Assembly: GCF_000143415.4 (NCBI RefSeq)
Contig: NW_003314296.1
Coordinates: 310,001 to 374,000 of the forward strand
From: Selaginella moellendorffii
Lineage: Eukaryota; Plantae; Lycopodiophyta
Length of the DNA stretch: 64,000 bases
Direction: 5' to 3'
Part shown: piece after piece, positions 1 through 24,189 of the stretch
Numbering within the stretch: position 1 is the stretch's first letter
How the letters are laid out: the number at the start of each line of letters is the position of its first letter
Made by a program: the position numbers and the translations under genes
Notes under the pieces: model-generated
What the model saw: only the letters and a program-made list of their open reading frames with translations
Told to the model about the DNA's origin: nothing
Databases searched by the model: none

Positions 1-463
1 CTGCCCTAGCATTTATCGCCATTGCCAAACGGCTGCACTGGTCTGGGAAGTGGTCTTTACATTGCGTCCATGTTGGATCTCCAAGTTTGAATATTTCAAA
101 ATTAGCACTTTTCTAAACATTGCCCCACTTGGCTGCAAGATAGTGAGCTCCCATGGGACCCCGGCTTCCGTTCGGGTATAACTCAGGCACCATCTTCTTC
201 CTCTTGAGATCTTTGAGAAGAGGAGTGAAAATCTTCCATGCCGCATCCAGTTCACTGGTCCTGATGAAGAGACAGCACTCTCCAGCAATGGCATCCAGCA
301 GTAATTGCTTGTAAGCATCAGGGATTTCTTTTGAGTATCTGTTACATAGGAACTTTAGCTCGTAAAAAAGAAGAGAACTGTTAGCTCGGAGGTCCAGAGT
401 GCTTCGATTGAGTCTCATTCCCAGCCCTGGGACTTTGTTGTTGATCTTGAGATAAATGCCTTC
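1..463 (-). pseudogene. Duplicated 3' fragment of plastid glucose-6-phosphate dehydrogenase (end of penultimate exon, last intron, last exon, 3' UTR); runs off the left edge
   Basis: Aligns by eye to 30035-30510 ([47 protein letters not shown]). A ~20 bp deletion removes the splice donor, and many substitutions are CpG-to-TpG type. Confidence 0.93.
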
Positions 464-1021: not shown

Positions 1022-1047
1022 CTAGTATTACCCAACAAATGTTAGGT
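1022..1047 (-). other. Candidate Helitron 3' terminus: hairpin plus CTAG
   Basis: The minus strand reads ACCTAAC-ATTT-GTTGGGT-AATA-CTAG then T. This is a 7 bp stem (one G-T pair) ending 8 nt before the terminus, on the same strand as and downstream of the RepHel and RPA genes. Confidence 0.7.
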
Positions 1048-1772
1048 GAATATCAATGTACTTTTGTGAACTTCATAATATGAATATTAATATATTCCTA
1101 GGCATAATAAGAATAAATATTTATTACTAGCTCTGCTGGGATAGTTAGATGCTAATTCTAAAAAGAGAACAATTTATTAAAACTTGCTTAAGTTCAATAT
1201 GTAACAAGCACTTGGTTTATTTAGTTTTTACTTAGTGATTGCAACCAAACACTATTTCTTAAATGTTTAACTAGAATAGAATAATACAAGCTTGGACTCA
1301 AAGCTTAAAAGAATTATTCAACACATGAAGAGGTGGCTCAATCATATTCCTCAATTTGGTATATTATTTGGGCATTCCAGAGGTAAGAGCAGTTAATGGG
1401 ATGGTATGGTAAAGGGATTTTTGGTATAGAATGGCTGGTTTTGCATTTGCAAGCAAGCAATGTGTATTGAAGTATAAATGATTGTATTTTCTGGTGGACA
1501 ATGTGTTTGTTCATTATAACATGCTAAATTCTGATACAGTTGATGCATTTGTCATTTATTGTCCACTTGAGAATCATGTGTTGTTCTTCTTTCCCTTTTT
1601 TAGTTTTTGTATCTTGACATTCCTTTCTTGCTATAGATAACCATCAAACAGAGCTGATGTTTGCTAGGAGGTGTGTTTTATTTTATTTGTTTTTGCAAGT
1701 TCCATGTAACTACAAAACAAAACACAGATAAATATATCAACGTGTAAAAGATTAGAATGGAATCTGCATACC

Positions 1773-3743
1773 TTAGGTGTCAAGTCCAAGTATATAGAAC
1801 CTTAGCTTCTCCATGTCTTGGTATTTTTCAAGCTTGCTCCAGATTTTGAATTTGTAAATCTTTGATCGGATACCATCGATAAGTAGTGAGAATGCAGGGT
1901 AGTTCTCATCTCGCATTGTAGCTAGTTCCTTTGCTGACATTCCCACTATTTCCTGTGTAGCCTCTTGAAATGCAATGGCCCACATATGACTGCTACTATC
2001 CTCAATGCACATCTTTAGAGCATACTTGAACTCCATGTTGGCAGACACAATATTGCAATAACTGCAAAACCAACCATCTGCTGTTTGGGTAGTTTTTTTG
2101 CCACATTGCCGTGCATTCACAACATTGATGCATGCATTATAGTAAAACTCATCTGTCTTCATTTCCTTCACAGTAGCTATCACTCTATAGATAAGGGAAC
2201 TCTCTAACACCTTTAACTACATGTTTGATATCTCTGATAAAGTAGTGGTGCAGCTAACAATCTGTCTGGATGATGAAGTGCTCAAATGTATGAAGTTAGT
2301 GACATTGTAGTACAATGTCATCCATTCTCTCAAATCAGCCACTGCTTCCATTTCCAGTTCAATAAGAATAGTGCTCACACCAATTGCTGAAAGTGATTTA
2401 CCATTGTAGTCCGATACCTTTCCACCCTTGACACATATTATTGGCTGAACTCCACTGTCTATCCGCTCCTGTATATATGAGCCCTCTTCTTCTGCTTTTA
2501 AATCCCAGAGACATAGATCAACACTGTGGCCTGAATCATCACCTAGACACAATGTTCTCTTCTTCACAAAAGTTCCACTGTCACGAGATGTTACTGTAAT
2601 TGTACCAATCCATATTACGATACCAACCACATCAACAAAAGAGTCCCTTTCCTTCTGACACGCACTTAATATGCTTGTTTTTGCCAAGACAATTCTTGGG
2701 AACATTGCATCCTCATCCAAAGCTGTAAACTCCATACCTTTGTTAGCCTGAATCTCCCATGTTGCTTCAAATGGTGTGTATGCCTGATTGGAATGTCGTA
2801 TTCCACCACTACCAGAAAATGAATACACTGTACCCTGTACAATCTTATCTGACAAAACCAAGGCACAATCGTCGGAGCCAATAATTCTAATCTCTGTTCC
2901 CTGGACATCAACAACGTCAAATGACATTATGCATCCAGATCTTTTCGTGTTGAAGTGTATCAACTTGTTCTTGTGTGTGACTCTTGCATGGAAGGACCAC
3001 CTGTAAGAACGGTCACTGATTTCTTTGATGAACACCTCTTTTATGACGGCCTTTTTTGAGCTCTCTCCCTGTATCAAAGGGAACAAATTGAATAAACTGG
3101 TTTAGACGTGAAATACCTTTTCCATGGACTCCTGGGCTCGTTTTTGTCCCTGGCAAGTTCAATTGTAGCAGTTATTTTAGAATTAAAACCAAAGAAAGGA
3201 CTTACCACTTTCATATCTTGAAGGATAGGGTTTGAGTGTGTGTGCTTCCATACTCCACGGCAGAGCACCGCACGTCCTGCGGTGTCCGGTGCGCCCCTGG
3301 CGGTCCTTGAAAATCTGGAGGAGCGAGTGCTGAGCTTGCCCGGTCGTACTCATAACCGCATCAGGTCTCCAAGGTGAGCAGCCTCTAGTCGATGGAACAA
3401 TGTAGGTAATCCAGGAAGCATGCATCCGAAACAATCAATGACCTACAGAATATTTTGGTGTTTAAAATGCTCTGTCAAAAGGAAAATACACTTACTGTTT
3501 CCCATTTGTCTCAAGGAACGCGTAGTCCAGGAATTTTACAAACGAATTCAGACGGGCACCACATGAATCTATTAAACTTGAAACTCGGTGTGATGCAATT
3601 GCCTCGAGTATTTCTCTGTCATCCATGACAGAGAACTTCTTGGTCAGAGCACCAGGCTTTGAATCTATATTCGTCACACGCAACATGAGTTCCTCTTTCG
3701 AATTTTCTTTGACCCTTCTGATCCCATCATCTGTGCACTTCAT
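1773..3743 (-). pseudogene. Helitron-associated RPA70/RPA1-like ssDNA-binding protein
   Basis: An N-terminal OB exon (3492-3743) is followed by OB domains (WSFHARVTHK, SFDVVDVQGTEIR, VDVVGIVIWIG, KRTLCLGDDSGHSVDLCLW, GGKVSDYNGKSLS) and a C-terminal zinc ribbon (YNAC..QCGKK..WFCSYC). There is an in-frame stop at 2217-2219 and an rRNA insertion. Confidence 0.9.
3259..3409 (+). rRNA. ~150 bp fragment of nuclear 25S/28S rRNA (non-functional insertion)
   Basis: agagcaccgcacgtc...ggtgtccggtgcgccc...ccttgaaaat...gcccggtcgtactcataaccgcatcaggtctccaaggtga.cagcctct.gtcgatggaacaatgtagg is a recognisable conserved eukaryotic LSU rRNA stretch. It is a GC-rich island in AT-rich surroundings. Confidence 0.92.
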
Positions 3744-5889
3744 GATTGTTCACGATAGGGTTTCTCCGTGATATCTGCTATATAATGTTCACATTTATCA
3801 AACCGTTGGCAACGTTGTTATCACTGCCTTGATGCATATGCATTGGTTGAAATAATAAAATTTATTCTTGTATTAGTGGGGAAAAAAGATTACGACTTTA
3901 TCTTCCTCCTCCCTCTCCAGAAGAGTTAGTGGCAAAAGTAGTTTATCTTCTCGAGAAACTTAAGTTCTTGTTCATTTTTTTTAAAAAAAATCTGATTCTA
4001 CACTACCGGCCAAAAGCCCTTTCCACGATCTACCGATCTTCATGTTTAATAACAACTGTGGCAATACACGGCTCCTCTTTCCCACCAGCAAGTGCTCTAG
4101 AAAACTTAAAGGAATCGTGGCCTTGTCGATTCATCCCAAGCCACCTGCAGAAGCAGAGACATAAACGTTCTGTGAAGGTTTTGTAAACTTCTCAAAGTGG
4201 TTCGCCCATAATGGATCCCAGGTGCAGCACGTCACATCCAAGAAGGTAGTCATAGCACGCAAGGAATCTTTGCTTTACTATTCTGATTCTGCCGGTGGCA
4301 AAAGGATGAATCGCTGATGATGGAGTTCCATGACTGACTTGAAAATCACAGAGAACCGACACAGTATGGTCCATGTCTAGTCACAGGCGTTTTTCTAGGC
4401 CTTTCCCTTTTGTTACCAAGGTTATAAGGACCAAAGAGGATTACAACGCCCACGGAAACGGATTGCGTCCAGATAAGCACAAAATTGTGTCTGATGCATC
4501 TTCCAACACTCGAATTCCAGCTACACTTGCTGGTTATGAACGCAACTACTGAACACCATTTTGATCCATAGCGAAACAGTTTGATCTTCGTTTATTTGTA
4601 GTATAGAAACTTGATGCATTCTTAAGCTTTTCTAGGGCAAGTGTGTGCGAAGGGAAACAACTCCCAGGAAAAACACTTTCCTTTTCTTCTTTTTTTCATC
4701 TGATTCTTCGTCTGAAAATCAGACGAATCCAACCAGCTCCAACCAGCTGCTCAAAGCATGCGATCCAATAAGCCAGACAGTAGGGCATGCATGTGAGATG
4801 GCCTGCGTAATCTCCATTTCCCGGTGCCTGTCTTGCACGGTTAAGGAAACCTTTTCAAAAATCTAAAGGCTGAAGATAACAGGTGTTAGAACCCAGCGAC
4901 AAGTAAAAGATCCACACCTGATTCCGATGTAACTCTCGAACCACCCTCATCCTGCCCCAGCCGTTAAGCTGGAAGAGACAAACGGTACGTGAAAATTCAG
5001 TCGGGCATCATAAAGCAAGTCTACTCCACTACCCTGGTACCCCGTGTCAAATGCTCGACCTGTAGCAGCACCAGACATAAACAATCATGCAAAATTGCTG
5101 TTGCTAACTGTATGGCTTGTTGTGGACGGTAGTCCTTGTACTGCTGCACCTCTTCCACTCTCATCCATGTACACTGCTTGAACTGTGTCAGTTATCTCGC
5201 ATTTTCTTCCATACTGTATCGCTCTTCCTCCTGGTTTCCTCATGGTTTCTAGTGTATGACTGTGATAATGGTCTTGTGCTGGATGATTTTTTTGCACAAA
5301 GAATGCTTGTTTCCGTGTCTTGTATGCTAGAAGTTGATGTTGTGTAATCCAGAAACACAAAAGTCAAGTGTAAGCCTTTTTTTATGCAGGTTCCAAATGA
5401 TTGTAATTCAGCAGAGCAATATTTCTATCTACCAAGTAGAGTAATGGGAACTATTGCAAACCATCGTTGAAGAGCTGTAATATTTACAAATTACGGTGCA
5501 AAAGCCAGTGCTACTTTGTCAAAGCTAAGAAATTGGTTCCTTTTCAACAAAGTTTGCTGCTGGGTTTTGCCTTTAAAGCAGAAGCTGGTGTGCCAAATCC
5601 AAACCCTTCACACTCACCCGAGGAGAGGAACTATGTCGTGTGGTCTGTTACACAGGTGGAGCTTGTCCATACGTACATGGACTTCCTCTTCCATGGGGGC
5701 TGCTATCTGGTTCGGCTGGATGAGCTGTATTATTTGGCTTTATTTAGTTTATTTTCTGACAATTTGAAATTTGTTTTATACCATCATTCTAATTAATGAT
5801 GAGAGGACCATAGTATAGATTAAAACTTTTTTTCTCAATCTATTTTTTAATATCTGTAAGACACAATATTTTTCCTTTTTCTCAATCTC

Positions 5890-8539
5890 ATTTTAATATT
5901 TGTCATGCTCATTGAATAGCCCACCGCTTGATAAGACTTATCATTCCGTTCAGCTGTTGAATCTGTAATAATAACAAATACAGCTCAAAAAATACAAAAT
6001 CATCTGAGAGGGATTAGAGGAAGATCAAGTACATTCTTTTGGGTTTTCAGCAATTGCTATTTTTAGATGTGCCTCCACTCTGAAATGGAAATTTAAAGTT
6101 AGTAATAGATACAATCCATACGTACTTCAGTGATAGTTCCCTCAATGTAGCTAGTTTAGGGAAGTTATGTATTGGCTGAGCATCTTTTAGTGTGGAGGTG
6201 ATCTCAGTGTCTGTTTTTTTTTCTAAATAGAAACTCTGCCATTTGTTATTTTACATTCTGGAAATCATCAAATTTTGAGTTAGCTTAAATTTAATTTATG
6301 TTTCTCACAAATTTACACCAAATACCTTATCTATTTCATTAGCAAAGTGAGATTCCGATGCCTTTGTTACTTTTCTTTGAAAATGTTCTGTGTCCTCGCA
6401 ATCTAAGAACAATGATTAGCATTGTGAATATATTTTAGCAAAGAAACATCATTCTTGTGTTAAAAAGTTCTACCGTGAAGATGTTCTATTTGTTGTTCAT
6501 TTTGAAATTGGTATAAAGTGTTTTCTTTATGCATCATGTTTTTTTTCTCAGTAGCAAAAGCAACATCAGCAACTGGTCTATTGGTCTGCTTTTAGAAAAA
6601 GAACTTAATAAAAAGGTATAAACAAACAAGCCAACCATAATCTTTTCTGCATTATTTGCAGTTGATACTCTAATTGTTAAACAATAGGTGTTCTTTCAAA
6701 TCCTTATTTATCATGAGTGAGCTCCACAAAGTTTGCTTCCAAAACTCCTAAATAACCTTAAAGAATGTATCAAAGACCAATAGTAGAATAGTAAAACTTG
6801 CCATAAACACTTTACCCTTGTTTTCGTGATGAATTCCATATTTTCCAAAAGGGCTGTCATATATTAAATGAGAAAAATGATCTTTCTGAATGATTGGTTA
6901 CCTTAATAAGTCGGTTTTTGTGGTAGACATTAAATCCTTGTATATCTATTTGTTGTGTGTACCAAAAGTTTACTTTTGCAGACATCTACATTCAAAGTTG
7001 AATAAATATCAAAGAAAATTTTAAAAATGGGGACAACTACTTTTAAATCATTTTGAAACTTGAAATTAAATTGCTCTATATGCATTGCATCACTCCTTAT
7101 GTCAGAGTGTTCAACTTCTTGATTTCGAAGAATGATCTTGAAGTTTTCTGGTAGATGCAAATACAACATTGAAATATATACCTGCAAACCTGAGTGGATG
7201 AGAAAGTGTATTTTAAATTTTTTCTTACCCGTAGAGAACTTTTGTACAGGAAAAAGTGTTTAATATTGGAATATTTGTTTGCCATTTCACATTGTATGTC
7301 ATGTTGACCGTTTCTAATTTGGATATCCTTAATGGGTGTCAGAAAAGTAAACTTTTAAAATATAAAACATACATGAGGATCAGATTTGAAGTCTAGTTCA
7401 ATTTGTTGCTCGTCATTCTCCCATAGATTATAGATGATTATTCTTGTCCCTTGGTCATTAATTTTCTTGAACTTGAATAGTAGAGACACATAACTTAAGA
7501 TTATTGATCTAGAATACCTACTTGGCTATGAATAGATCCTTCATTTTGATAAGGACTCCATTTAGTGATTACATCCATATGAATTTTCCAATCTTGATGT
7601 GTACATTTATGGATCTCTTTTAACTCAAGCCCATATCCTTCATAATTCAGCTGCAAATATGAACAATGTGATGAATACACATCTAAGAGAATTTATCCAC
7701 TCAAAACCATTGGAACTATAATATCTTGCTGCACTGTATCACGGAGAAAGCTATAAGAGAGTAATCCCACACTTTGAATAAATCTGTACACAATGTTAAA
7801 TAAAGTGGCGAAAAATATGGCAGTCAACTCTTATACCTGTCACCTACTGCAGTGTTTGATTTTGAAAATACAATGACATCTGCACCAAGGCGCGTTGTAC
7901 TTGTCTTGAAACCATTTCCATTTGGTAGTATAAATAATATTAAAAAATGTAAAAAAAAAGATGGCACTTACATTGTCCAATTGTTCTACTGGCTGTGTCA
8001 TTTACAGAATACCCAAAGGACATACATTGTCGCAAATGATCAAGAGTCATGCCATCACCATTGTCTAAATTAACAAATACAATGTTACTTGCATAAAGAA
8101 AGAAAAAAGGAAAAAAAAAAATGTCTTACAAACCTTCAAACAGAAGCATTGGCGTGCCATTAACTGGATTCTTGAGAACATCTATGTTGGCAAATGTCGC
8201 TCCATTTGTTGTCTGGTCGAGTGCATTATCAAGCAGCTCTGCTATTGCTGCAAAAAGTGTAAGATCATGCATTAGAAAGAAAAGAGGAACAGTGATATGC
8301 CTATTTGAATTACCACCAAAAGCCCACTTGTGGCTTCTTGCGTTAGAATGAAGGAATTTGGGATGCATTCGTACGTGGTCCATTCCAGCTACAAAACCAC
8401 GTAATGAGTTACTTCCTTAAAAAGCAGTCATAATGAGCAAGGACCTGGCATTGTTTGTGCGTTAGAACCATCGTAATTTCCTGCTTTCCAAAACTGGGAA
8501 CATTGTCTTGGCTGCTGTGTACAAACAACTGTTTTATCA
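5890..8539 (-). pseudogene. MORC: MORC/CRT1-family GHKL ATPase (HATPase_c + S5), multi-exon; 5' part lost in the gap
   Basis: Exons translate to CSQFWKAGNYDG, HVRMHPKFLHSNARSHKWAFG, AIAELLDNALD, DNGDGM..CMSFGYS, GNGFKTSTTRLGADVIVFS, QSVGLLSYSFL, GTRIIIYNLWEND, IQGFNVYHKNRLIK/PFW and GVLEANFVE..HD..GFERT. There is an in-frame TAA near 6678 and an AG-to-AA acceptor change near 7922. The 3' end is approximate. Confidence 0.92.
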
Positions 8540-9056
8540 NNNNNNNNNNNNNNNNNNNNNNNNNNNNNNNNNNNNNNNNNNNNNNNNNNNNNNNNNNNNN
8601 NNNNNNNNNNNNNNNNNNNNNNNNNNNNNNNNNNNNNNNNNNNNNNNNNNNNNNNNNNNNNNNNNNNNNNNNNNNNNNNNNNNNNNNNNNNNNNNNNNNN
8701 NNNNNNNNNNNNNNNNNNNNNNNNNNNNNNNNNNNNNNNNNNNNNNNNNNNNNNNNNNNNNNNNNNNNNNNNNNNNNNNNNNNNNNNNNNNNNNNNNNNN
8801 NNNNNNNNNNNNNNNNNNNNNNNNNNNNNNNNNNNNNNNNNNNNNNNNNNNNNNNNNNNNNNNNNNNNNNNNNNNNNNNNNNNNNNNNNNNNNNNNNNNN
8901 NNNNNNNNNNNNNNNNNNNNNNNNNNNNNNNNNNNNNNNNNNNNNNNNNNNNNNNNNNNNNNNNNNNNNNNNNNNNNNNNNNNNNNNNNNNNNNNNNNNN
9001 NNNNNNNNNNNNNNNNNNNNNNNNNNNNNNNNNNNNNNNNNNNNNNNNNNNNNNNN
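8540..9056. other. Assembly gap (N run)
   Basis: Run of Ns. Confidence 1.
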
Positions 9057-10435
9057 CTACCTTTTCAAAGTCAGTTGATAAAATTATAAACTACAAATTA
9101 ACTTTATAAACGATAGATTTCTACTTCTTCCGTTATGTTTTCAGAGGTTTTTACATGCAAATGAAAGACTGCTAGGTTGCTATGCTAGAGTGGATTGCCA
9201 GGTGCGGTCAGGCAAGAGAAACAGGTCTTGTCCCCACATTCACGTGCAACATTCCTATTTTTTCTTTCCTCTGCTACCTGACTGCTTCTCTGTTTTGGGC
9301 TGCTCCCAGATTCGGGTCGGAGCGATCGAGCAAAATGGATCCGTTAGAGTTAATCAGAGCTTCACTTTTGACATCAAGGACAATTTTTGCAGCTTTGCAA
9401 GTTTTTTTCTACTGACGAGTTTGGGTGGTTGGGCAGAATGCAGTTCTGCTGTTACACATTGTTTCTAAGACACGTTTTGGAGGAGAAGACTCGCTTGGGA
9501 TTTCTACGGAAGTTCGTGTTGTTGATCTTCTCGATAAAAAGGGAGGTCTGAGGAAGGTGTCTTTTCTCCTTGTGCCACCTTATTGCTCTGTTTCATTTCA
9601 GGTGGTCAAGATGGAAAAACCAAGTGGTATGATCTTTCTGGGAAGAGATTAATGCCGGGGAAGGTGATCAGTCTGTTCGCTTGACTTTTAAAAATGTTCG
9701 TTGTTGTCGTGTATTTGCAGGTTTTAATGGACTTAGATGCAAGAATAGCTGAACCCGAGCATGATATCAGTGTTTTCTTGGGTACATGGAATGTAGGAAA
9801 TGCAAGACCGGTATGTCAGCTATAATTCTGGACCAATTTGCTGATCTTTGGCAGCTCAGGCTGTGGATTTGTCATCGTGGCTTATTACAAAGAGCAAGCA
9901 TGCTGAATTGCTCTACTTCTTCTTGGTACATGTCCATTTCATTTGAGGATTCAAAAAGTGCAGTGTCACCTCCTTTCCTCTGTTAAAAAATATAAATAAA
10001 ATACAAGAGATCTTTTCCAGTGTTCATCAAGGGGAATTCGTTTTCATTTTGTCATCAAAAGAAAACTTAGTATCAAGAAGGTAAGTTAGGGCGAGTAAGC
10101 AATGGGCAGAGACTGACCACCACAATTCCTATAAGCCCGTGATTGGAGTTCGTTAATGATATCAACATTGAAGCCACGTAACAAAGGTAGTGTGGGATTA
10201 AACTTGCAAGCTTGGTCCGAATTTGTTTTGAAGCAGGTTCATTCCAGTTCAAAACCAAGTCATCCACGTTTCATAGACATTCTAACCTTTGATGTCAATC
10301 TAATAGAAATTGGTTAACTTAAGTACAGAGTTTCATTACCAGCGTAAAGTTGATACAGTTGTAAGGTTATGGTTTATATAACCATTTTATTTTGAGGAGC
10401 ACTTGCATTTTTTATTTACTCCCAGTATAAGCCCT

Positions 10436-11649
10436 TCATTTTTTGGATGATGGTGCAAAACCAATTACATCATTAGATACATCTAGCACAAACCTCCCCA
10501 CGGGTGGATGTTTTATCATTTGTGTCTTGACATGTGTCGAATCCTTTTTCCAGCTCGTAAGAATTGGTTCTTTAGAACCGTAAAGATGATCAACTAAGTA
10601 TGATGGAATGTTAACATCCCTGGTCGTATTTTCCATGTGTATCTTCCCCTTTAAAGTCATAAGCTGTTTCACTGGGCCAACATACTTGCACACAGCACAC
10701 ACTGCAGTGTCTTTAGATGTTCTTTGTGTCACTATTGTATCACATGAGCTGCAAACGGTATGGATAAAAATAGGACGCAGCCTATCTATCTCAAACCATC
10801 CTGGCACCTGTAATTGATTTGATGTCTGTTTTAGCATGTATTATATCTCATGTGGCTTACCCCATTACAACATATAGCAAGACTCCGGTATAAGGCTGTT
10901 AAAAAATGGTTCTTTGCTGGATCAAGTATGCGTGTGACAATAGTCATTCCAGAGACATTCGCTCTTTTAAATACACCATCTCCTTGTAAGTTTATAAAGC
11001 ACCGGCTAGGAGCGGTTTCTGAAAGGAGTTCATTTAGCATCTCTCTGAATATATATATATTGCTTGCTAGGAATTTTACCTGGCACAAGTAAAATTGGGA
11101 TCTATCAGTAATAGAATAAGTAAGTAATTATTCTATTACAGTTAACGTGTCGCTGGAGTCTCCATTGTCTGCAACTCTGATCTCAGCAGTATTATGTGCT
11201 AGGCTGTTGACCTTAATCATGACAGCTTCAATAGATCCAATTGAATCACGTCCCCTATGCATGTTAGTAAACTCTGCTATGCTTATTGTGGGCACAGACA
11301 GTCGCAACAAAGGCGGACTGTGCTGGAATTCTTCAACTATGGTTGTGTCCATGATCTTCAGAGTAAATCCCCATGTCCCCCTATCGTATTTTGGGACTGT
11401 GGGGATAACTTCAAAACCATACAACTTGAGCCATTTTCCTCTGGTAAATTCCTGTGCACGTTTCTCTGCTACTTCGTGGAACATCCATACGGTAATAGTT
11501 TCAGTGCCACCAAAGTCAGTCATGTCTACACGCAGTCGATTGCCTCCATGCACAAGGCCTCATTTGAGACCGTAGCTGTTGAGTGTATACCCTGCAAACA
11601 TTAACGTGCTTGCACTCTCATCAATGCCAGGTTATTTCGATCGCTGCTG
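10436..11649 (-). pseudogene. Second, divergent RPA1-like OB-fold/zinc-ribbon ssDNA-binding protein
   Basis: An OB-like segment (LRVDMTDFGGTETITVWMFHEVAEK..FTRGKWLKLYGFEV) and a C-terminal CSSC...CAVC zinc ribbon followed by a beta-rich tail, as in RPA70 DBD-C. Split by an intron or frameshift; the 5' end is in a gap. Confidence 0.65.
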
Positions 11650-11749
11650 NNNNNNNNNNNNNNNNNNNNNNNNNNNNNNNNNNNNNNNNNNNNNNNNNNN
11701 NNNNNNNNNNNNNNNNNNNNNNNNNNNNNNNNNNNNNNNNNNNNNNNNN
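11650..11749. other. Assembly gap (100 N, probably unsized)
   Basis: Run of 100 Ns. Confidence 1.
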
Positions 11750-11990
11750 CTGGTATATAGCAGATTCTTATATACCAATGTTTCTGTAATGACATATTGT
11801 TCTTAAAAGGCTGGTATTCGTAGTAGATTTCTTGCAAGCTCTGGTGAGAGTAGTGAGCTTTGTTACAATAAAAAGATGTAGATGTTCGCCGCAGTTTTTA
11901 GGTTTCTGCTAGCTCAGTTCTTAATTAATATAGTAGTTCATGTTTTGTACATATTAATTAATAAATATTTATGTTAATTATTTAATATTT

Positions 11991-12088
11991 GAATCTATAT
12001 TCGTCACACCTAACACTAGTTGCTCAATCAAATTTTATTTGGCCTTTTCTGTTCCCATCCTCAATGTTCTTCATGATCTTTCATGCTA
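11991..12088 (-). repeat. Diverged duplicate of the 5' end of the RPA70-like gene (3661-3757)
   Basis: gaatctatattcgtcacac is identical to 3661-3679, and gapped similarity continues through cttcatgat (the ATG). Confidence 0.75.
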
Positions 12089-12922
12089 TAAATAGGTATA
12101 TATATTTATTAAATATAAATATATGCTTGTTTATAGGATGATTAATTCCACATATACTTGCTATAAGGAACATGATGTTAACATTAACATATTTAGATGT
12201 AAACTAAGGGTAAAAAATAATTAAACGTAAACTAAGGTTTTAAAAAACATCTCCTAGGATACATCACCACTATTTGGTGGTAATACCCCTACCTGCTTCG
12301 GTGATAGCGCTCTATTGCATGTAATTATGCTACAGCGCATTGTCAAGCGAGCCGTGAGACTACAATTGAATCGGAGTGCCCACGCTCGTCATGGGAATGG
12401 CCACCACACTTATCTCCGTGATATATTCTTCAGAGTCTTTGACCACTTTCCTGTCTCTGCCAGCTCCTCATCGCAAGGAAGGTAACATTAGAGCAAGGTT
12501 GTGATTTTTCTACTCAATTCTTCTTCCAGAAGCTCCTTTGCAACCTTTGCTCTCAAAGGGAGATTTCAAAAACAGCAACAAACTAAGCAGCACTGGATCT
12601 GAGCACGACTTCAACGAAGTAAAGAAGCCGTCCCAGCACCGTCTTGTCACGTACATCTACTCATTCTTTTATCTTTTGCAAGTATCTACTTGGCTATGTT
12701 GCTCACTGGACCGGGATGCTATTAACGTTGGCTAGCTTTCAAAATGGGTCCAGATTGGCACAATGTGGTTCACAGCGGCACTATACATTTTGTTGCTCAT
12801 AGCTTCACTCATTTTTTCAGCGCTGTTATATACATATCACATGGGCTGTTCCTTCATTTCCCTTTTTTATCTTATAAAAAACATAAGCATGAAGCATCAC
12901 TTGTTTCTTTTTTCCTATGAAT

Positions 12923-13185
12923 CTACAGTGGTGTTCTGCTTCCAGGGTCTTTATCAATTTTTTGCACTGAAGCAGTGAGATCTCCATCTTTATCTATGTT
13001 TATAGTGCATATGTCTCCGATTTCACTTCCATGATTCTTTAAGAATATCTGCCAGTTTGTATCGGTCTCAAATATGTTGTCGTTGTTTGTACCAGAGTAC
13101 AGTTTGAACATGATTCATCGAACACACAGATAATGTTTTGAATGTTGCAGCGGAAACAGTCTTATTCGTTTGGAAACTGCTAGTG
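12923..13185 (-). pseudogene. Possible degenerate B3 (REM-like) DNA-binding domain fragment
   Basis: TNWQIFLKNHGSEIGDICTINI resembles the B3 C-terminal W..F...N.L..GD.C.F motif. There is an upstream in-frame stop. Confidence 0.4.
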
Positions 13186-13257
13186 GTTTTCAAATATTTT
13201 TTCTACAAATTATAAAATACAACACACATACATACCGTCAACCAAACGCCTTTGCAG

Positions 13258-14350
13258 AAGTGGAAAGGACGAAAAGAACTTTGTTCCCCCCAATCTACCC
13301 AGAGATGTAGTTTTCAGAATTGCAGAAAGCAATGGCTATTGTAGCGCAGTTTTTTCATGTATAGCTAAAGAATTTTCCATGGAATTTCAAAGTGATAGAA
13401 TTTGGCAATTGCATTGTGAACAGGATTTTTCTGTCTACATGTGTACAGATTACGAAGGTAGACGCTGCAGAACGTACAAGGTTTGTATTTTCACTGATTT
13501 GCTTAAAACAAATGTCAAATTTTGCTACAGGAAACTTACAAGAGTTGGTTCAATGTGTTCAAATGCTACAATTATAATATTACCTCTGTAACCAAAAAGC
13601 TGTGCCTTAAAATACGAAGCTTCCTCAGATTTAAAGGTTTTGAGTACATGTCAACCAAAGGTTTACCAAATAACGTCATAAATGAAGCGGAGGCAATTTT
13701 GAATGTCAACCTTCCAAATTCTTTAAGATGTCTACTGCTTTCTATGGACGGTCAGCCTGAAAATTGTATCATCAGTGGTTTACAGCATCAAGAATACAGA
13801 GGTTTTATTGGTACTTATTGGACCTGTAATACATTTATATGCTCAAAATTACTTTCACTCCGAGAGATTTGCTTGTTCACCATAGACTTGAGATTATCTG
13901 TGCCTTGTTTCCCTGCTAACTTGGTATCATTTGGTTGCTCATTGGATGCTTCGAAAATTTACTTTATAAATGTTCATTCAAGTAATGTAGACTGAACGTT
14001 AAAGAAGTCTCATTAGTAATTGGTTGAACAGGTGATATTTTCATAACTTCAAAAGATTTCAGACTCAATTTGAAGTTATGCTGTGTACACCTATATCTGT
14101 TCGTGGTGAGATGTCACTCATTTGCTGGCTTGCAAAGCTTTCATCTAATCTGCATACTGGAAAATCTCATTTAATTCAAAACCCCATTAAAGCTATATTT
14201 CAAGGTGGTTTGGCAGCAAATAGACTGTATCATGTAAGGCTTTACCAGTTTGTTCTTTGCGAATTCATTGTGTCTATGTCCTTTAGCATGGTTGTGTACC
14301 AATACCGGAGTTGTCATCCTTTGCCAGTGATGAGTTTACATATGTAGCAT
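13258..14350 (+). pseudogene. SKIP16-like F-box/SMI1-KNR4 protein (ApaG part eroded)
   Basis: F-box-like LPRDVVFRIAE..SDRIWQLHCEQDF, then DYEGRRCRTYK|ETYKSWFNVFKCY, then SMI1-like INEAEAILNVNLPNSLRCLLLSMDGQ..GFIGTY..LLSLREI, then LICWLAKLSSNLHTG. This order parallels plant SKIP16/FBXO3. There is a GT-AG intron at 13481-13530. Confidence 0.75.
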
Positions 14351-14756
14351 TTATATGCATAGATTCAGAATACCTCTCACTGTACAACAACATATACCTT
14401 TGTGCATCACACAAGTCAAAAAGTAATGTCAATGATACTCTTTTGCACAAATTTAGCATATGGTTTGGTTCTCAAGAGGTAAGAATCTTTACTTGGTATT
14501 ATATAGATGATAAATTAGTGTACAGGAGTATTGCTATGATGGAAGAACATATGGTGTCATGACTAAAACATTTACATTGGAAGTTCCACTATGCACTGTG
14601 TGGGTTGTATGCAAGTCGGAATCAGAAACTTTGACTAAATCCCTGGATGTATCTTTTTTGGATTATATGTTTTAAAGGAGTTACATTATCGTCTCATAAT
14701 ATTATATTCACTTTGATACTCCTCTCCCATTTAGTATTGTCTCTCTTTGACCTAAA

Positions 14757-14984
14757 ATGGAACAGAAGGCCCATAAATGTCCTTTTGGCAGCTCTGTTTG
14801 CACAAGATACGAGGATTGCTTGCTCTGTGGATTTCAGAATTGCACAAAGTCATATAAGATTTGTAATTCATTCAAGCGATGTGAATATTGTTTGTTTAAA
14901 AAAGCTGTTCTGAAATTTCAAGATCAGCATGGAGTCCAAGAGAAAGATGCTTTGAAGGAAGTTTCAAAAGCTTGGAATTCGTAA
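14757..14984 (+). CDS. Small Cys-rich protein with an HMG/YABBY-like C-terminal helix (hypothetical)
   Basis: Intact 75 aa ORF with 8 Cys, ending EYCLFKKAVLKFQDQHGVQEKDALKEVSKAWNS. Confidence 0.35.
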   Translation: MEQKAHKCPFGSSVCTRYEDCLLCGFQNCTKSYKICNSFKRCEYCLFKKAVLKFQDQHGVQEKDALKEVSKAWNS

Positions 14985-15968
14985 CTAAAAATTTGCAAGT
15001 ATCATTTAATCACCAAAGTCATCAAACCATGCTCATTGGCTTTGGCAACTAATTCATTTTATGTTTTGGCTTTTTCTTGGGGACGATTTACTAACTACTA
15101 CATCTATTTGACATTTCTTCCCAACTACGTCACATTTTTCTGGAGTTTTGTCTGTGGCATTTGATTGTTACCTGTCCAACACCTCAATTTGATGGTGAGT
15201 AACCTTTACCTTGCAATAGACTGTAGTGATTGGACATTGGCTCCTATGGCAAACCACCCCAATTTGAGCTATTAGTAATTCCTGTCACAACAAATAAATC
15301 TGTAGCATGTGGATTTGCCCAGACAACTATCAACCATGTGAGTAGTGCAAATATGGTTTCTAGGAGGCAAATTGTTTTTTTCAGTTTCTCCTTCGGTGAC
15401 CATTCTTTGGGCAACTCTGCTAGAATAGCTTTTAAGGAAGATAGAGATAAGGGTGCTCGAAATCAAGCAAATTTACAGTTACAAAGTCGTTAATATCCTT
15501 ATACCCATGATTTTCAAGACAGTCAATACAGAAAGGAAACCTTTAGTTCAAACAATAGATTTCGATGAAGCATGGTTTCTACAAAAAATGGCAAAACCAA
15601 ATTTGTTTGTGGCCGGATTTGGCTATCACACACTACCTCAACATAACAGCATGGGAATTCTAAGGTGTTATTTCTAGCCTCTCTAGACAATTACATTTCT
15701 TTGTGATTAAATATTATACATTTGTTTTTTTATTTTAGGAGTCACCTTTTTTTTCATTTTGGCAACCATTCCAAGTTATCTCTTTATATAATAAACTATT
15801 TATTTTAGTTTTACTTATGTGTGAATCACTATTCTAGGATAAATGCAATTGTGTATGTGTATCACTAATATGTTTGAATTTGTAGACAGAAAAGTAAGTT
15901 TTTTTGATAAATTTTAATTTAGAATTTTTAAGTTCACATTTAATAATTTGTTGTTTAGTGTTGAAAAT

Positions 15969-18900
15969 CTATAAAATTTCCTTGTAGACTACATTCTTTG
16001 TGTATGTAATTTATTGTCTCTTTTTAAGTTTACCTTGGTTCTTACATTCCTCTACACATATAACTATTTGGTCTTTAAAGGTACATCGTGATAGTGTAAC
16101 ATATAATTGCCCATGTCCAAAAACAAGACGTGGTAAGAGGATTCCAACATTATTTAAAGTTTGGCCCTGTGATTTGCATATTGTAATTGAGAATGTAAGT
16201 CTCAAAGGAAATTATTGTCTTTTTAATACAAATAACACGTCACCATCTGTAGGTTTTAGTATGATTCTTGGTAGTAAGACCTTTTTTCCTTCTCTATCTC
16301 CATGTAATATTTTTGCTTCTATTACATTTTGTAACGTTGATGTAATCATTAACTTAGTACCATTACATAAACCTTTTTTTACATCAAGATTTCATAGAAG
16401 CATCACAATGCTTCCAATTTTTATATTTAAGTTATGCGGAGGCATCTCAAATGGTGTTATGGAATTAAGATATTCTACTGGGTAGTCCAGTATTTCTTCA
16501 AAGGAATCACTATCAATTGTATCCACACTTTTAAAAGAAAATAGTCTTCCTGACATCCTTGTTAGAACTTGTTCATTTATATCTAACAAATGATCATTCA
16601 ATGTTATTAAGATTGCTTTTTGTGAGTTACTTATAGAAGGTAACACTTTTTGACCAAACACAACATCTAACATGGAATTCTTGGTTGTACATTTTTTTGG
16701 TAGTTCTACTATATCATCTTCATATCCATCAAGTCTTGGTAAATTACCATTTCCGAGTCTAATTAACCACTCTGACCACTCCTTTTCATCTTTGTTAATA
16801 TGCATATTTTCTGTAAGTGTATATTTCACTACAAATGGCCATATAAAACTTGACTTAACACTATTTTGTACAATTTGAACCTGTCGTGCTCTTTTAAGCA
16901 TAAGTAGTGTTTGTCTAAAATCACCACCAATTACAACAGTTATACCACCAAATTTATCAGAACAACCTTTAATGTCACGTATTACACGTTCTACAGCATT
17001 AAATGCATGTACTGGAACCATACTTATTTCGTCCCAAATTAGTAAGTCTATTTTTCTAATTTCATCAGCCTCTTTTGAATTTTCCCTTAAATCAGATGTA
17101 CATGTTTCAGTGACTGGTACAGGTAATTTAAATGTAGAGTGTACTGTGCGACCACCAATTAATAGTGTGCTTGTAATTCTTGTCCATGTTACAAACAAAG
17201 TCTTTCTTCCAAGTGCTTGTGAATGTGTTATTAATGTATTGAATAGAAATGATTTTCCTGTTCCTCCTACACCATCGATAAAAAATATTTATGGTTCATT
17301 TTTATCATCCAATGCTTTACATACTTTATCAAAGACATATTGTTGATCTTTATTCAGTAATGATTTGTTTCTTTCAATATCTTGGTATTCAAACATTTCA
17401 TTCTCATATATGTTGGTTCTTTCTTTATTATTTTCTAGATATGGAGTACATGGTATAGTAATATCATAATCTAAAAGGCATTTCCCATGTTGTTCTAGTA
17501 AAAGAAACAACTCTTGAAGTGCATGTGCATATGCTACATCCTCATTATTGTGTTTACATATTAAATCCTCACACATATCTACTTTGTATTTATTCCATAA
17601 TTTTTTAGGATCATTAACCTCACAAAAGAGACACATTATTCCAAATAAATATCTAATTTTAGAAGGCATTTGAAATGTGAAAGACTCCTCTAGACATATA
17701 TCCCATTCTTAGTCATCCTGTAATAATCCCATCGTTTGTGCAACTTCTCGATAGCTATCATATTGTATGTTTTTCCAATTACGTAAATGTTTAAAACTTG
17801 TTGCACCTTTATTATACAACAATAATAATTGCATATAAAATCGTTCACTATCTTTCAGTGGTACAGTGTACATTCTACCTATAAATTTCCAACCTCGTTG
17901 TCTTTTTACCCATGTTTTAGTTTTTGCATTCCAAATATACCATTCCGGAATTTCTGGATATGTCAATGTTCTTGCAAATTCATCTCTTTTATTCAATTCA
18001 AACCATTCAGTAAGTTTTGTTCTATGACCTTTCTTTAATGCAATTTCTTCTTCACCCTCATTGAAGTAAACACTTTGCAAATTTGGTAAGTGCACATCTA
18101 ATCTTTCAATTGAATGTGATCTTCCATGTAAATCATATCCAAATAACCTCCACATTCCTTCAGCAGCTGATATATAACGGCAATTTCTGAATGCATTTAT
18201 TTCATTCCAATCAAGAATATTCTCTTTCTCTGTGTTTCCTTCTTTGTGAAAGTGTATCTCTGCACAATCATGGCCTTTATATATATATTTAAAAATATAT
18301 TTCACACTTTTCACAGTTGAGCAAACCTCTACATTAATATGAGTTTTATATTTACGCAAAAGATACTTACTATAAGGAACAACAAACCTATTGTCAATTT
18401 CATTATTTTTAATGTAGATTTTATGACTATCATAACGTCTTTTGTACTCTGGGAATTGGCCACTAATATTTTTTGTCTCTTCACAGTAATCTCGTGGATA
18501 TTGAGATTTACATTCACCTTTTTTGTAACATGGACTTTCAGGAAATCCAGGAACATATGGACCATGTATCATATGTTTTTTCAAAAGTTCATACAATCCA
18601 GGATCACTATTTGGGTTTGGTATTTTTGCACTAACAATGTTGTCTATATCATCTACGGTTTTGATTTTATTCTCATTTTTTAGAATTACAAGTAGATGAC
18701 AATGTGGTAGTCCTCGTTTTTGGTACTCAATTACATACACATATGCATTAACTTTTCCAAATATTTCTTCTTTGTATATGTCATCTATAAGTTTTTGTGT
18801 TTTAGCATGGAAAACACGTGCTACCAAATCTGGTCTGTCTAAAGAACTTTGTCCTAGTAATAAATTCTCAGTTATCTCTTGCCATTTTGGGTTACACGTC

Positions 18901-20374
18901 ATCATAATAAATAAATCAGGTTTTCCATATTTTCTTACTAAGCTCATAGCGTCTTGATAATTTTGATTCATTTCATATTTCTCGGTCTACCGATGAATCC
19001 TAACGGCAAAATCACAAGTTTTCCAGCACATATCCCTTGTTGTTCTGCTTTGTTTATAACAAAATCAGAAAGACCTCTGTATGCTTCAACTCTTAATTTT
19101 CATTCATGGTTTTTTATCCAATCGAGACGACCACCCTCTACTTTAGTGTACATGTCAACCATGTATTGTTGGGATAATTTTCCACCCATTAAAACTGAAT
19201 TAAATTCAATAATCTTAAAACTATCTCTTATCAAACCACGAATAGCAAACTTGTAGCAATAATACTCCATCATTGTTATCTTAGTTCTTTTTAAAGACAA
19301 ACCCTTGTCTGTGTATTTTAAATCTGGTGACCAGCCTTCATTTCCATTTGGAAAAAGCAGTGGATATACTATAGGATCACAACATGATGTCACAATTGAT
19401 ATCTCTTGCATACTTTCACCTTTCAGATGTATTGCAATACTACAGTTAAATGGAGGCTCCCCAGTAGGGTTTGTAAACACTGCAGCAACTTTATTTGAAT
19501 TTGGTGCATTATATCTTCTTGGATCTATTGTATTTTCACCTTTTATATACATTACAATATTATGTAGTCCATTATTTATATTTGAACTTGTCATATGAAG
19601 CTCATCTTCCACATCTTTTAGCATTTTAAATGCCTTTGCATATGGATTAATTTCTCATAATAAAGCATCTAATTCATTCATCAGTGTTGTATCACATTTA
19701 CTGTTATATTTACTTTTCATTCTTGTTTCTGTAGCTTCTAGTGTGTCTAAAATATAAAGTTGAGAATATTTTGCATCATGACCTTGCTTAGGACGGAAAC
19801 TGCCAATTGAATGGTATACTTGTCCATGAATTTTGAAATAATATGGTCCATTGCCAATCATTTCATCAATATTTGCCCCCATAGATGCAAATGCCAAAGC
19901 ACTGTTATAATTTCGAATTAATTCTTTGAATTTTCCTCATTAGTCTGTTCCATCTAATAATTTATGAATCAGTTCAGGGAACTCAATTTGTTTTTCTATA
20001 GACACACATCCACCATGACAACATTGTGATTGTGTTTCTGAAGCAAAAAGAAAAGCTTTACAATAGTCACAATGTTTATCCATGAGTCCAATATAATCTA
20101 CTTTACATTTACCATCTATGTTGTTTTGCAAGAGTCCTAAATGTTTAGTGTTTTCCATGCTCTCGGTTTCATTTCCAAGATTTACTTCATTAACAGGTAG
20201 GGTAATAATCTCAAAAGTGTTTCTAAAAGTCTTTTCTATGGGTATTGGGGGTTCTTCAAAGGATACCAGGTTTCTCACACTTACATCCATACTTCTATTC
20301 ATATATAGAGATGAATTCAAAGTTGTTGAACTTTTTTTTATTATACAGCCTTCATGTAAAATTATATCACACAA
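15969..20374 (-). pseudogene. Helitron Rep/helicase (HUH-Y2 replication initiator + PIF1 SF1B helicase)
   Basis: Rep motifs GKPDLFIMMTCNPKW, VYVIEYQKRGLPHCHLL (HUH) and KYIFKYIYKG (Y2). N-terminal C-x2-C...CCHGG and FKIHGQVYHSIGS. Helicase motifs [35 protein letters not shown] and [13 protein letters not shown], with a TKNVVYKEIL* end. Several stops and frameshifts. Confidence 0.96.
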
Positions 20375-20851
20375 GCATCATATTAAGGAGCTGTGCTTCT
20401 GCCAGCACTTTGTTTCAGTGTGCTTCTATTTTCTTGTGGTTTGGCTATTAGTCTATTTACTTATTTTCACCATCTAGAGCCTGCACACACTGTCTAAGCT
20501 TCTATTTTCTAAAAGAGATTGTAAAATCTCCTACAGATCAATGTATTTTGGAGCAGAACAACATTACAAAGCCGGGAAAAACAAAGCTCAGGAAACATAG
20601 AAACAAAATTACCTCTTGACAAATGTGAAAGCAACCTAATTGTGCAGTCCTTTTTTCTATGATTTGAAACAGTTTTTCCTAGCCTACGTGTCTGTTTAGG
20701 TACACTCTCGAAAAGCCTTTGACAGTAAAGAGTTTTACCACAGCTTTTTCTGTCAATCATTTTTTCATTTGGCTTGGGGATAAAAAATTACAGAGTCATA
20801 CCGATATGATAGCCCGGGTTAAAAGATTATAGAGGGTGAATCTCTTTTGGC

Positions 20852-21245
20852 AAGATGTCCGGGGAAAAACTCAGTATCATGGCTCTCTATGATGGCACGA
20901 TGGCAAGCTTGAGCAGGCAAAGTACAAGAGGCCCATGTAAATGATGTGAAACTCCATGGTGATGGGCTTTGCTCTCTAGACAAGGACGGGAAGCTCTAGA
21001 GCTCTTCCATGCCATGGCCTTGAAATAGGAGGAGATCGCTTTCGTGAACGTGTGGCAGTACTTGGAGTCTGCAACCATGGCTTGAATCTCACTGCAGATC
21101 ACTTCAGCAGCATGTGTTTGCAAGGGCCGGGAAGCTGAAGGATTCCAAGGGGATGCTGGGCAAGAGGAGTGAGAGAGTCTGCTGGTAGCTTGTCGAATGT
21201 ACTGGGATCTAAGCACTGCTTTGCAGACGGCACAGGAGTTTGGTG
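20852..21245 (+). pseudogene. Degenerate PLS/E-type PPR fragment
   Basis: Pieces read KNSVSWLSMM, NSMVMGFA, GREALELFHAMAL, VLGVCNHG, FARAGKLKDSKGML and ESLLVACRMY. Confidence 0.7.
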
Positions 21246-22254
21246 GTTGTAACAAGGATCTTTTTTCATATATAATGCTTGCAAAAGGTGGCAGTTAAGT
21301 TTTTGAAGTGTTTTGTAAAATTGGGAGAATGTTTTGATATATTTGAGTGTGTATTTCTTTAAAAGGAGTGGAAGCTTTAAAGACACAGCTTTTCAAAACT
21401 TGGTTTGTTTTTTTCTTTCTTTCTTTCTTTCTATTCTTGTTTTCATCTCTCATTTTTTCAAAACATCAAAGGCCTACATATGAATGAATGATTGTTTTGG
21501 AAGTTAGCTGTATCATTCTCTTGTGCTATTTGACACATTTCTTGTCGCCATTTCCAATGGGGCTTTTGCAAATGCAGGGGTAAGCTGTAGGTGTGTGTCT
21601 GACCTCATCTCCAGATAATGTAAATGCCAGAGAATATTTTTTTTGGTGTGTCTGCTCTTGGATCCAATGCTTGTGAAGGCGCTTCCGTTTTTCTTGCTCA
21701 TCTGTCTCACGCTCACTGAATAATCATCCTTTGACACCTTAAGAATACCTTAGCAGTTGATCCACACAACAAAACAAAAAACAGCGCTATCACAAAAATC
21801 TAGAGGCAATGTGATCCCAGAGCCAGCCAACACAGATCCTAGGCTCTGCCCTTGATGCTCATGGCAATCCGCTGCAATTGGAGGGAAAAGAGAAAAAACT
21901 CAGTTAAAACTGGATCTTACAAGTACAAAACCAAACAAAGAAAAATGTTACCTGTACACTGGTTTGGAGAGCTTGATCAACGTATTTTAGTGGTTGTTTC
22001 TCCATTTGAAGAGTTCCCCTGCAGGATAAAAGTCTATTGCTAAGCAAACATGAGTCGTAATCTGCAAGGAAAAAGTCAATTTAGAAAGCAAGATCAATTC
22101 CCGAATCTCTCTTTCAGCACATGTGCAATTAACTTGTTCAAAAGATCAGTGCAAGTTTTAAGTCAGAAATATCACATTGTTTCTGCTGATTATGACGCTT
22201 ATCCGTGCTCTTCATGGCAAAATACTGGCAGGAACCTTTCAACTCTACTAAATT

Positions 22255-24091: not shown

Positions 24092-24132
24092 AAAGGATAT
24101 GCACACTCCCGCTGCTGCGTTCACCACCACCA

Positions 24133-24133
<1 letters not shown>

Positions 24134-24189
<56 letters not shown>
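24134..24189. repeat. Compound (CA)n(GA)n microsatellite
   Basis: Directly visible. Confidence 0.95.

What the first reader, a model, noticed from the sequence alone, without database searches (positions are those of the whole stretch)
5890..8539. A Helitron carrying its own MORC (transposon-silencing GHKL ATPase) gene
Seen: an intron-containing MORC/CRT1 gene with the GHKL motifs (ELLDNA, DNGDG, GNGFKTS) and S5 region lies between two RPA-like genes. It is co-oriented with RepHel and upstream of the Helitron 3' hairpin-CTAG. It is AT-rich and diverged, unlike the host genes at 30-54 kb, yet has few visible lesions (one TAA, one AG-to-AA acceptor). Known: plant MORCs compact chromatin and help silence transposons. 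Inference: this may be long-carried, element-adapted cargo rather than a recent chance capture. It could act as a dominant-negative/decoy anti-silencing factor, or as a source of siRNAs against host MORCs. I do not know of a described Helitron-MORC module, but could not check.
Basis: partly seen in the sequence, partly recalled or inferred. Interest (0 to 1): 0.85.

Follow-up and report, generated by a model that had tools for sequence, protein, structure and literature searches.

The report
Helitron family carries modified MORC gene
A family of rolling-circle jumping genes in the spikemoss Selaginella carries a whole copy of the plant's own chromatin-silencing gene MORC7; every copy sampled, including this one, is now broken and not expressed, but the family kept an altered version of the protein readable for a long time, so it was probably useful to the transposon.

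Summary
Real, and a family trait. The window (Selaginella moellendorffii) holds a 23.3-kb Helitron (24420 to 1127, minus strand). Inside it lies a DNA-level capture of host MORC7, with 18 of 19 exons and the introns in host positions. Four more copies sit on other scaffolds (90-97% identical; different flanks where seen).

This copy is dead, with seven lesions rather than two. All five copies are broken, and two RNA libraries show no element-type reads.

The inferred family ancestor, however, is open through exon 16. Against the host, dN/dS is 0.16. CpG decay hit 68% of synonymous but 19% of nonsynonymous CpG sites, and 0 of 41 stop-creating sites (about 15 expected). So the protein was under selection while the DNA decayed like methylated transposon DNA. 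Selection inside the family is only suggestive.

The protein is altered. The core catalytic residues are kept, but the ATP-lid lysine (MORC2 Lys89 equivalent) and the C-terminal dimerisation coil are lost.

Long-carried cargo is supported, anti-silencing is untested, and the siRNA idea is disfavoured. I found no paper describing it. This scan had already noted the same family on other scaffolds.

The parts
1127..24420 (-). Helitron copy, 23.3 kb, non-autonomous now; 5' TC at 24420-24419 after A (24421); 3' CTAG at 1130-1127 before T (1126)
   Evidence: homology with L003-L007 ends at 1129; head-to-tail junction in L006 fixes the 5' end as TCATACTCC; L002 shares the 5' end
1127..1150 (-). 3' terminus; family form is a GC-rich hairpin + 7 nt + CTAG|T; the window copy has lost the right arm of the hairpin
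1773..3743 (-). RPA70-like accessory gene; one stop in the main exon; carries a private 150-bp rRNA insert
3259..3408 (+). 150-bp fragment of 26S rRNA gene, present only in this copy
   Evidence: Rfam LSU_rRNA_eukarya E 3e-26; absent in L003-L005; DNA joint 3258-3409
5847..8539 (-). Captured MORC7-derived gene (pseudogene in this copy). Exons: 1 <8539-8445, 2 8388-8314, 3 8247-8134, 4 8064-7972, 5 7921-7837, 6 7783-7708, 7 7650-7522, 8 7471-7373, 9 7327-7229, 10 7181-7041, 11 6985-6902, 12 6853-6802, 13 6747-6636, 14 ~6594-6474, 15 6402-6326, 16 6257-6126, 17 6079-6033, 18 from 5962 (stop at 5911-5909 or 5849-5847 by frame). Exons 15-18 are inferred from homology, without RNA support
6636..8388 (-). 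GHKL ATPase + S5 module (exons 2-13): catalytic Glu, Asn, G1/G2 boxes, alpha- and gamma-phosphate lysines kept; ATP-lid lysine K182 changed to N in all five copies; 4-residue deletion (KDAR) in S5
5847..6079 (-). Remnant of the C-terminal coiled-coil exons 17-18, out of host frame and truncated; exon 19 not detected
   Evidence: host helix 643-748
8540..9056 (.). Assembly gap hiding the MORC start codon and upstream DNA (about 1.08 kb in L003 and L005)
10439..11560 (-). OB-fold / RPA-like gene with a CxxC...CxxC tail; a homologue (47-66% in translated blocks) lies in a distant Helitron family (L008)
13184..13992 (+). F-box-like/SUKH cargo gene (5' part); homologue at 43-45% in L008
   Evidence: SMI1_KNR4 E 2.5e-4, below Pfam cut-off
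15960..20400 (-). RepHel transposase (Helitron_like_N + PIF1 helicase), broken by stops

Best explanation
A Helitron ancestor copied the whole host MORC7 gene as DNA, introns included (shown). Replicating master elements then kept it as a protein-coding accessory gene while it drifted away from the host gene (shown for the frame and catalytic core; that this happened inside the element is strongly inferred, about 0.7). The product would be about 640 aa: a nuclear-signal-like N-terminus, a GHKL+S5 ATPase module with core catalytic residues, an altered ATP lid, a shortened linker and no dimerisation coil (shown by sequence). Most likely use (inferred, untested): counter-silencing. A coil-less, lid-altered ATPase module could pair with host MORC7 through the ATP-dependent GHKL interface, or occupy its DNA or partner sites, without forming a working clamp, and so loosen MORC-dependent repression of the element when it is active. 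Inserted copies, including this one, decay as ordinary pseudogenes and are silent.
For: Whole-gene colinearity with host MORC7, 71% DNA identity across exons and introns. Five copies on different scaffolds, with unrelated 3' flanks where seen. The element models form a supported clade next to host MORC7 on a branch about 5 times longer; amino-acid changes are 53 element, 15 host, 23 unresolved. dN 0.137, dS 0.857; ML omega 0.16, p about 1e-27 against 1. Context-matched test: CpG transitions at 27/40 synonymous vs 13/67 nonsynonymous sites; 0/41 stop-creating sites vs 14.7 expected. CpG o/e is 0.40, like RPA 0.31 and RepHel 0.34 and unlike host genes at 0.77-1.02. Six of six exon length changes in exons 1-16 are multiples of 3, vs 4 of 14 introns. 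Catalytic residues kept, lid Lys lost. MORC2's ATPase fragment dimerises on ATP without the C-terminal coil.
Against: No intact copy among five, and no full-length element-type protein among the best 120 hits. No element-type RNA reads in two libraries. Selection on the internal branch of the family is not significantly stronger than on terminal branches (omega 0.19-0.28 vs 0.57-0.60, p 0.27-0.30). [quoted passage not shown] Keeping every core catalytic residue fits an active enzyme as well as a decoy. MORC4/7-type proteins in Arabidopsis mostly repress protein-coding genes. A related Helitron family has no MORC in the 22 kb fetched (L008), and derivatives without it exist (L006).
Confidence: 0.45

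Rival explanations
1. Selected accessory gene, but with a role in transposition rather than counter-silencing: an ATP-driven DNA-binding or chromatin-opening module that works beside RepHel and the RPA-like proteins on donor, circle or target DNA.
For: All core catalytic residues are kept. The gene sits among other long-kept accessory genes (RPA70, OB-fold, F-box/SUKH). The same selection evidence applies.
Against: A related family (L008) lacks it in the DNA fetched. No Helitron is known to need a GHKL ATPase (own knowledge).
Confidence: 0.22
2. The constraint dates from a period as an ordinary host duplicate of MORC7 (since lost). It was captured late and has only hitch-hiked since.
For: The within-family test is not decisive. 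No host flanking DNA was found in the element to tie the capture to the present locus. A third MORC7-like fragment (XP_024521937.1, 86% to the host N-terminal part) shows that other duplicates arose. No expression.
Against: The divergence carries a directional CpG-deamination signature not seen in local host genes. The internal family branch has 15 synonymous, 13 nonsynonymous and 0 stop changes, and ML omega 0.19 (p 0.01-0.07 against 1). No such paralogue was found in the protein searches.
Confidence: 0.2
3. The cargo is kept as a source of small RNAs against host MORC7, or as camouflage that makes silencing costly to the host.
For: Such cross-talk is described for captured genes in maize and rice. 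Copies share 33-57 24-mers with at most 2 mismatches with the host gene.
Against: Only 0-2 perfect 24-mers and 1-6 perfect 21-mers per copy. Synonymous sites diverged freely while the frame was kept, the opposite of selection for nucleotide match. The host gene keeps CpG o/e 0.91 and is transcribed (two reads with host-type spliced letters).
Confidence: 0.06
4. Neutral passenger: a chance capture, never selected in the element; the low dN/dS comes from the host lineage alone.
For: All copies are dead; the L002 lineage is neutral (omega 0.87-1.05); 13 of 109 invariant residues changed.
Against: Most synonymous change is directional onto the element (72 GC-to-AT vs 17 AT-to-GC transitions). About 15 stops would be expected and none is fixed. 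Exon indels keep frame.
Confidence: 0.04

Closest known systems
Plant Group II MORCs (AtMORC4/5/7; S. moellendorffii MORC7, XP_024528529.1)
   Same: Donor gene: same intron positions, GHKL+S5 module and catalytic residues; supported sister group in the tree.
   Different: Inside a Helitron, multi-copy, 3.5-5 times faster protein evolution, lid Lys lost, KDAR deletion in S5, C-terminal coil lost, all sampled copies broken and silent.
Helitron gene capture (maize, Arabidopsis, rice)
   Same: Host gene DNA with introns carried between 5' TC and 3' CTAG ends.
   Different: Typical captures are fragments, mostly pseudogenes; this is a near-whole gene with long-lasting selection on the reading frame.
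TET/JBP dioxygenase genes in fungal Helitrons and other DNA transposons (PMC12730594)
   Same: A Helitron carrying a chromatin/epigenetic enzyme proposed to help escape silencing.
   Different: Those enzymes would erase a silencing mark; here the cargo derives from a repressive host factor, so any benefit needs altered or antagonistic action. Donor and element are in the same genome.
VANC / KIU (Ulp1-bearing) anti-silencing genes of Vandal Mutator-like elements (PMC5735166, PMC13317346)
   Same: A plant DNA transposon accessory gene, partly host-derived, kept by selection.
   Different: VANC has shown, sequence-specific demethylating activity and is unrelated to MORC; no activity is shown here.
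RPA70-like accessory genes of plant Helitrons (own knowledge; Pfam matches)
   Same: Host-derived, intron-containing gene carried by the same element.
   Different: RPA is widespread in plant Helitrons and has an obvious ssDNA role; MORC was seen only in this family.

Membership tests
Helitron (Helitron1 type) | Rep/HUH + PIF1 helicase transposase | tested here: met
   PF14214 E 2.5e-39 and PF05970 E 2.7e-47; broken by stops in this copy
Helitron (Helitron1 type) | 5' TC, 3' hairpin + CTRR, inserted between A and T | tested here: met
   A|TC at 24421/24420 and CTAG|T at 1130-1126; full hairpin in L003-L006, right arm lost in the window copy
Helitron (Helitron1 type) | Dispersed copies with unrelated flanks | tested here: met
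   3' flanks of window, L003, L004, L005 and L006 share no homology; L002 5' flank differs
MORC (GHKL+S5) | GHKL motifs I-III and gamma-phosphate lysine of the S5/transducer domain | tested here: met
   E126, N130, G163, G165, M166, S180, G190, G193, G195, K197, K468 kept in the ancestor and the window; PF17942
MORC (GHKL+S5) | ATP-lid S-x-K lysine contacting the beta-phosphate (MORC2 Lys89) | tested here: not met
   K182 is invariant in 65 plant MORC7-type proteins but N in all five element copies; equivalence to Lys89 is by motif alignment
Plant MORC | C-terminal coiled coil for dimerisation | tested here: not met
   Host helix 643-748; element exon 17 out of frame, exon 18 frameshifted and stopped, exon 19 not found
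Plant MORC Group II (MORC4/5/7) | Phylogenetic placement and shared intron positions | tested here: met
   Selaginella clade SH-aLRT 100 inside the MORC4/7 group (99); quick tree, no bootstrap; introns 1-17 colinear
Functional MORC gene | Intact, expressed reading frame | tested here: not met
   All five copies disrupted; no element-type RNA reads in X20 or X21
Functional MORC gene | ATPase activity and ATP-dependent dimerisation | not testable with these tools
   needs biochemistry
Transposon-encoded anti-silencing factor (VANC-like by function) | Maintained by selection as an element gene | tested here: inconclusive
   Strong selection on the host-to-element stem with a methylation signature; within-family test not significant against terminal branches
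Transposon-encoded anti-silencing factor (VANC-like by function) | Expression relieves silencing of cognate elements | not testable with these tools
   no assay; no expression seen

The most novel reading that the evidence does not exclude
A plant Helitron domesticated a host chromatin repressor and remodelled it (lid lysine and dimerisation coil removed, catalytic core kept) into an antagonist of the host's MORC7: a transposon-borne counter-silencing protein built from the silencing machinery itself.
Probability: 0.3. Interest if true: 0.85.

Novelty: new variant of a known kind. Interest (0 to 1): 0.6.

Why it matters
Transposons with counter-silencing genes are known (VANC, fungal TET/JBP), but I found no report of one carrying a MORC. 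The case offers a natural variant, shaped by selection, that keeps the catalytic core but drops the lid lysine and the coil. That makes it a ready probe of what those parts do in plant MORCs and of whether a transposon can turn a repressor against its host. It also warns that the published count of five Group II MORC genes in Selaginella (PMC6048995) may include Helitron cargo; I could not check the gene list.

Tried and rejected
(1) 'Single-copy host gene beside a Helitron': rejected; the gene lies inside defined termini in several insertions, and the true host gene lies elsewhere among HSP33, PPR and SRP54 genes. (2) The hairpin-CTAG at 1048-1022 as the family end: rejected; homology with all copies stops at 1129. 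(3) Count-based test of the internal family branch (p 0.001): discounted, because polarising with the host inflates synonymous counts; the ML result is the one relied on. (4) Search for host flanking DNA in the element: nothing. (5) MORC in a distant RPA-bearing Helitron (L008): none in 22 kb. (6) RPA70 as a control for within-family selection: too few changes to inform. (7) Four contig look-ups (P0001, P0220, P0225, P0226) were not on record, so the copy count is a lower bound. (8) Rfam scan of the element: nothing at E 0.1; only the targeted scan showed the rRNA insert. (9) DNA contig depth was not used as copy number, as the tool warns. (10) The careful tree did not finish; the quick tree is cited. 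(11) Paper searches found no Helitron-MORC description; the library is incomplete.

Full report
Source. The best match to the gene's first complete exons is Selaginella moellendorffii MORC7 (XP_024528529.1, 758 aa), and RPA-like models of that genome match the window at 97-100%. Earlier notes of this scan had named the organism and reported a Helitron with MORC on other scaffolds. I treated them as leads and tested the claims here.

Observation. Three-frame reading shows the MORC exons on the minus strand from the edge of an N gap (8540-9056) down to about 5850, with ELLDNA, DNGDG and GNGFKTS. Pfam finds Morc6_S5, RPA domains at 3101-1776, and Helitron Rep and PIF1 domains at about 19650-16400. 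The upstream 'RPA-like' gene at 11560-10440 has only weak OB-fold hits but is conserved in a distant Helitron.

Element limits. Homology of four other loci with the window stops at 1129. Their shared end is a GC-rich hairpin, 7 nt, then CTAG|T. The window copy has lost the hairpin's right arm and ends at CTAG 1130-1127. A head-to-tail junction in L006 fixes the 5' end as TCATACTCC, which lies at 24420 after an A. The element is thus 23.3 kb and the MORC is well inside. The 3' flanks of the window, L003, L004, L005 and L006 are unrelated, so these are separate insertions, not alleles.

Donor and mode of capture. The host gene lies among ordinary genes and has 19 exons. The element copy aligns to it as DNA across exons and introns (71% over 1.9 kb), with introns 1-17 in the same places. 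L002, L003 and L005 supply the start codon and an N-terminus with the KKPKI motif. This is a whole-gene DNA capture. No host flanking DNA and no exon 19 were detected. A protein tree of database models places the Helitron models as a clade (SH-aLRT 100) beside host MORC7, within the MORC4/5/7 group, on a stem of about 1.0 against 0.2 for the host (quick tree).

Copies. MORC-bearing copies are the window, L003, L004, L005 (96.5-97% to the window) and L002 (90%). L007 holds a fragment and L006 lacks the gene through an internal deletion. This is a lower bound. Exon by exon, every copy is broken by its own lesions. The parsimony ancestor is open through exon 14, and exons 15-16 keep the host phase in L003 and L004. 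One CGA-to-TGA change in exon 12 occurs in three copies; I read it as recurrent CpG decay because L003 and L005 keep the host's CGA.

Selection. Host versus ancestor, exons 2-13: dN 0.137, dS 0.857, ratio 0.16; introns differ by 0.49. A codon ML model gives 0.16 (p about 1e-27 against 1). Most change lies on the element side: 53 amino-acid changes against 15 in the host and 23 unresolved, and 72 GC-to-AT against 17 AT-to-GC synonymous transitions. Host CpG sites decayed far more than other C/G sites (66% vs 28%, p 1e-5). The ancestor's CpG o/e is 0.40, like RPA (0.31) and RepHel (0.34) and unlike host genes (0.77-1.02). Within the same context, CpG transitions hit 27/40 synonymous but 13/67 nonsynonymous sites, and none of 41 stop-creating sites where 14.7 were expected. 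All six exon length changes in exons 1-16 are multiples of three, against 4 of 14 introns (p 0.011). So the frame was protected while the DNA was decaying like methylated transposon DNA. That this happened inside the element is an inference. The direct test is weaker: the internal family branch has omega 0.19 (p 0.01-0.07 against 1) but is not distinguishable from terminal branches (p 0.27-0.30). The L002 lineage is neutral.

What the protein became. Using the MORC2 structure paper (PMC5811534) and an alignment to MORC3, the general base, Mg ligand, G1 and G2 boxes, lid serine and alpha- and gamma-phosphate lysines are all kept. The lid lysine that contacts the beta-phosphate is Asn in all five copies, though it is invariant in 65 plant relatives. 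In all, 13 of 109 invariant residues changed (host 0), including a four-residue deletion in S5. The host's long C-terminal helix (643-748) is lost: exon 17 is out of frame in the window and L007, and exon 18 is frameshifted and stopped in all four near copies. This coil mediates MORC homodimerisation (PMC5651269).

Expression. In two RNA libraries (1.4 billion letters read from each) at 90% likeness, the MORC and RPA genes have essentially no reads; two reads at 8036-8134 carry host-type spliced letters. The tissue is not given, so a narrow expression window is not excluded. The one strong RNA signal, at 3259-3408, is a 26S rRNA fragment private to this copy.

Mechanism. Shown: whole-gene capture, amplification with the element, selection on the frame and catalytic core, loss of the lid lysine and coil, and death of the sampled copies. 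Inferred: that selection acted in replicating master elements (about 0.7). Untested: what the protein did. I rank counter-silencing first (0.45): a coil-less module could still engage host MORC7 through the ATP-dependent interface or compete for its sites. A role in transposition (0.22) and earlier life as a host paralogue (0.2) are real rivals. The siRNA reading is weak because perfect matches to the host are almost absent. The donor's clade in Arabidopsis mainly represses protein-coding genes and only some RdDM loci, which tempers the counter-silencing story.

Comparison and novelty. It works like other selected transposon accessory genes (VANC/KIU; TET/JBP in fungal Helitrons) but belongs to none of them. 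It is a Helitron and a Group II MORC derivative, but not a functional canonical MORC. Paper searches found no Helitron-MORC module. Verdict: new variant of a known kind, interest 0.6.

Method notes. The reads call used 5,940 letters.

Noticed in passing
window 3259-3408: 150-bp 26S rRNA fragment inserted in the RPA70-like gene of this copy only.
   Followed up: yes
window 13184-13992 (+); L008 15767-16492: F-box-like/SUKH gene inside the Helitron, with a 43-45% homologue in a distant Helitron family; matches the cargo described in note s1-339338.
   Followed up: partly
window 10439-11560 (-); L008 18857-19943: OB-fold/RPA-like gene conserved at 47-66% in the distant family, where it lies on the opposite strand to RPA70.
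   Followed up: partly
window 1022-1048 (-): Second weak hairpin + CTAG|T, 105 bp beyond the family's 3' end; may be another Helitron end or a substitute terminator after the hairpin was damaged.
   Followed up: partly
window 99-463 (-): Decayed 3' fragment of the G6PDH gene (85% to 30114-30510), outside the element.
   Followed up: no
window 4000-4035 and 4580-4975: RNA reads with consistent differences and loose ends map here, suggesting a captured fragment of another expressed host gene.
   Followed up: no
window 3658-3752 and 11988-12083: 95-bp internal repeat (79%) matching the first coding exon of the RPA70-like gene.
   Followed up: no
protein P0001 (XP_024521937.1): A third MORC7-like fragment in Selaginella, 160 aa, 86% to the host N-terminal part; genomic context could not be fetched.
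   Followed up: partly
L006 19250-19290: Exact head-to-tail junction of two family members (CTAG followed by TCATACTCC).
   Followed up: partly
L002 9731: Internal deletion joins the 5' part of RepHel directly to the DNA upstream of MORC; L003 has a different deletion (20979 to 9164).
   Followed up: no
run X6 (organism B): A run labelled as another organism holds contigs 95-99% like the MORC region at low depth; its identity is coded, so a second species or a mislabelled sample cannot be told apart.
   Followed up: no
window 59548-61194 and 62019-63648: Long inverted repeat, about 1.65 kb arms at 79% identity.
   Followed up: no
window 22255-24091: Three-copy internal repeat (about 470 bp) in the Helitron's 5' region.
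   Followed up: no
PMC6048995 Table 1: Five Group II MORC genes are listed for Selaginella; several may be Helitron cargo models; gene list not available.
   Followed up: no
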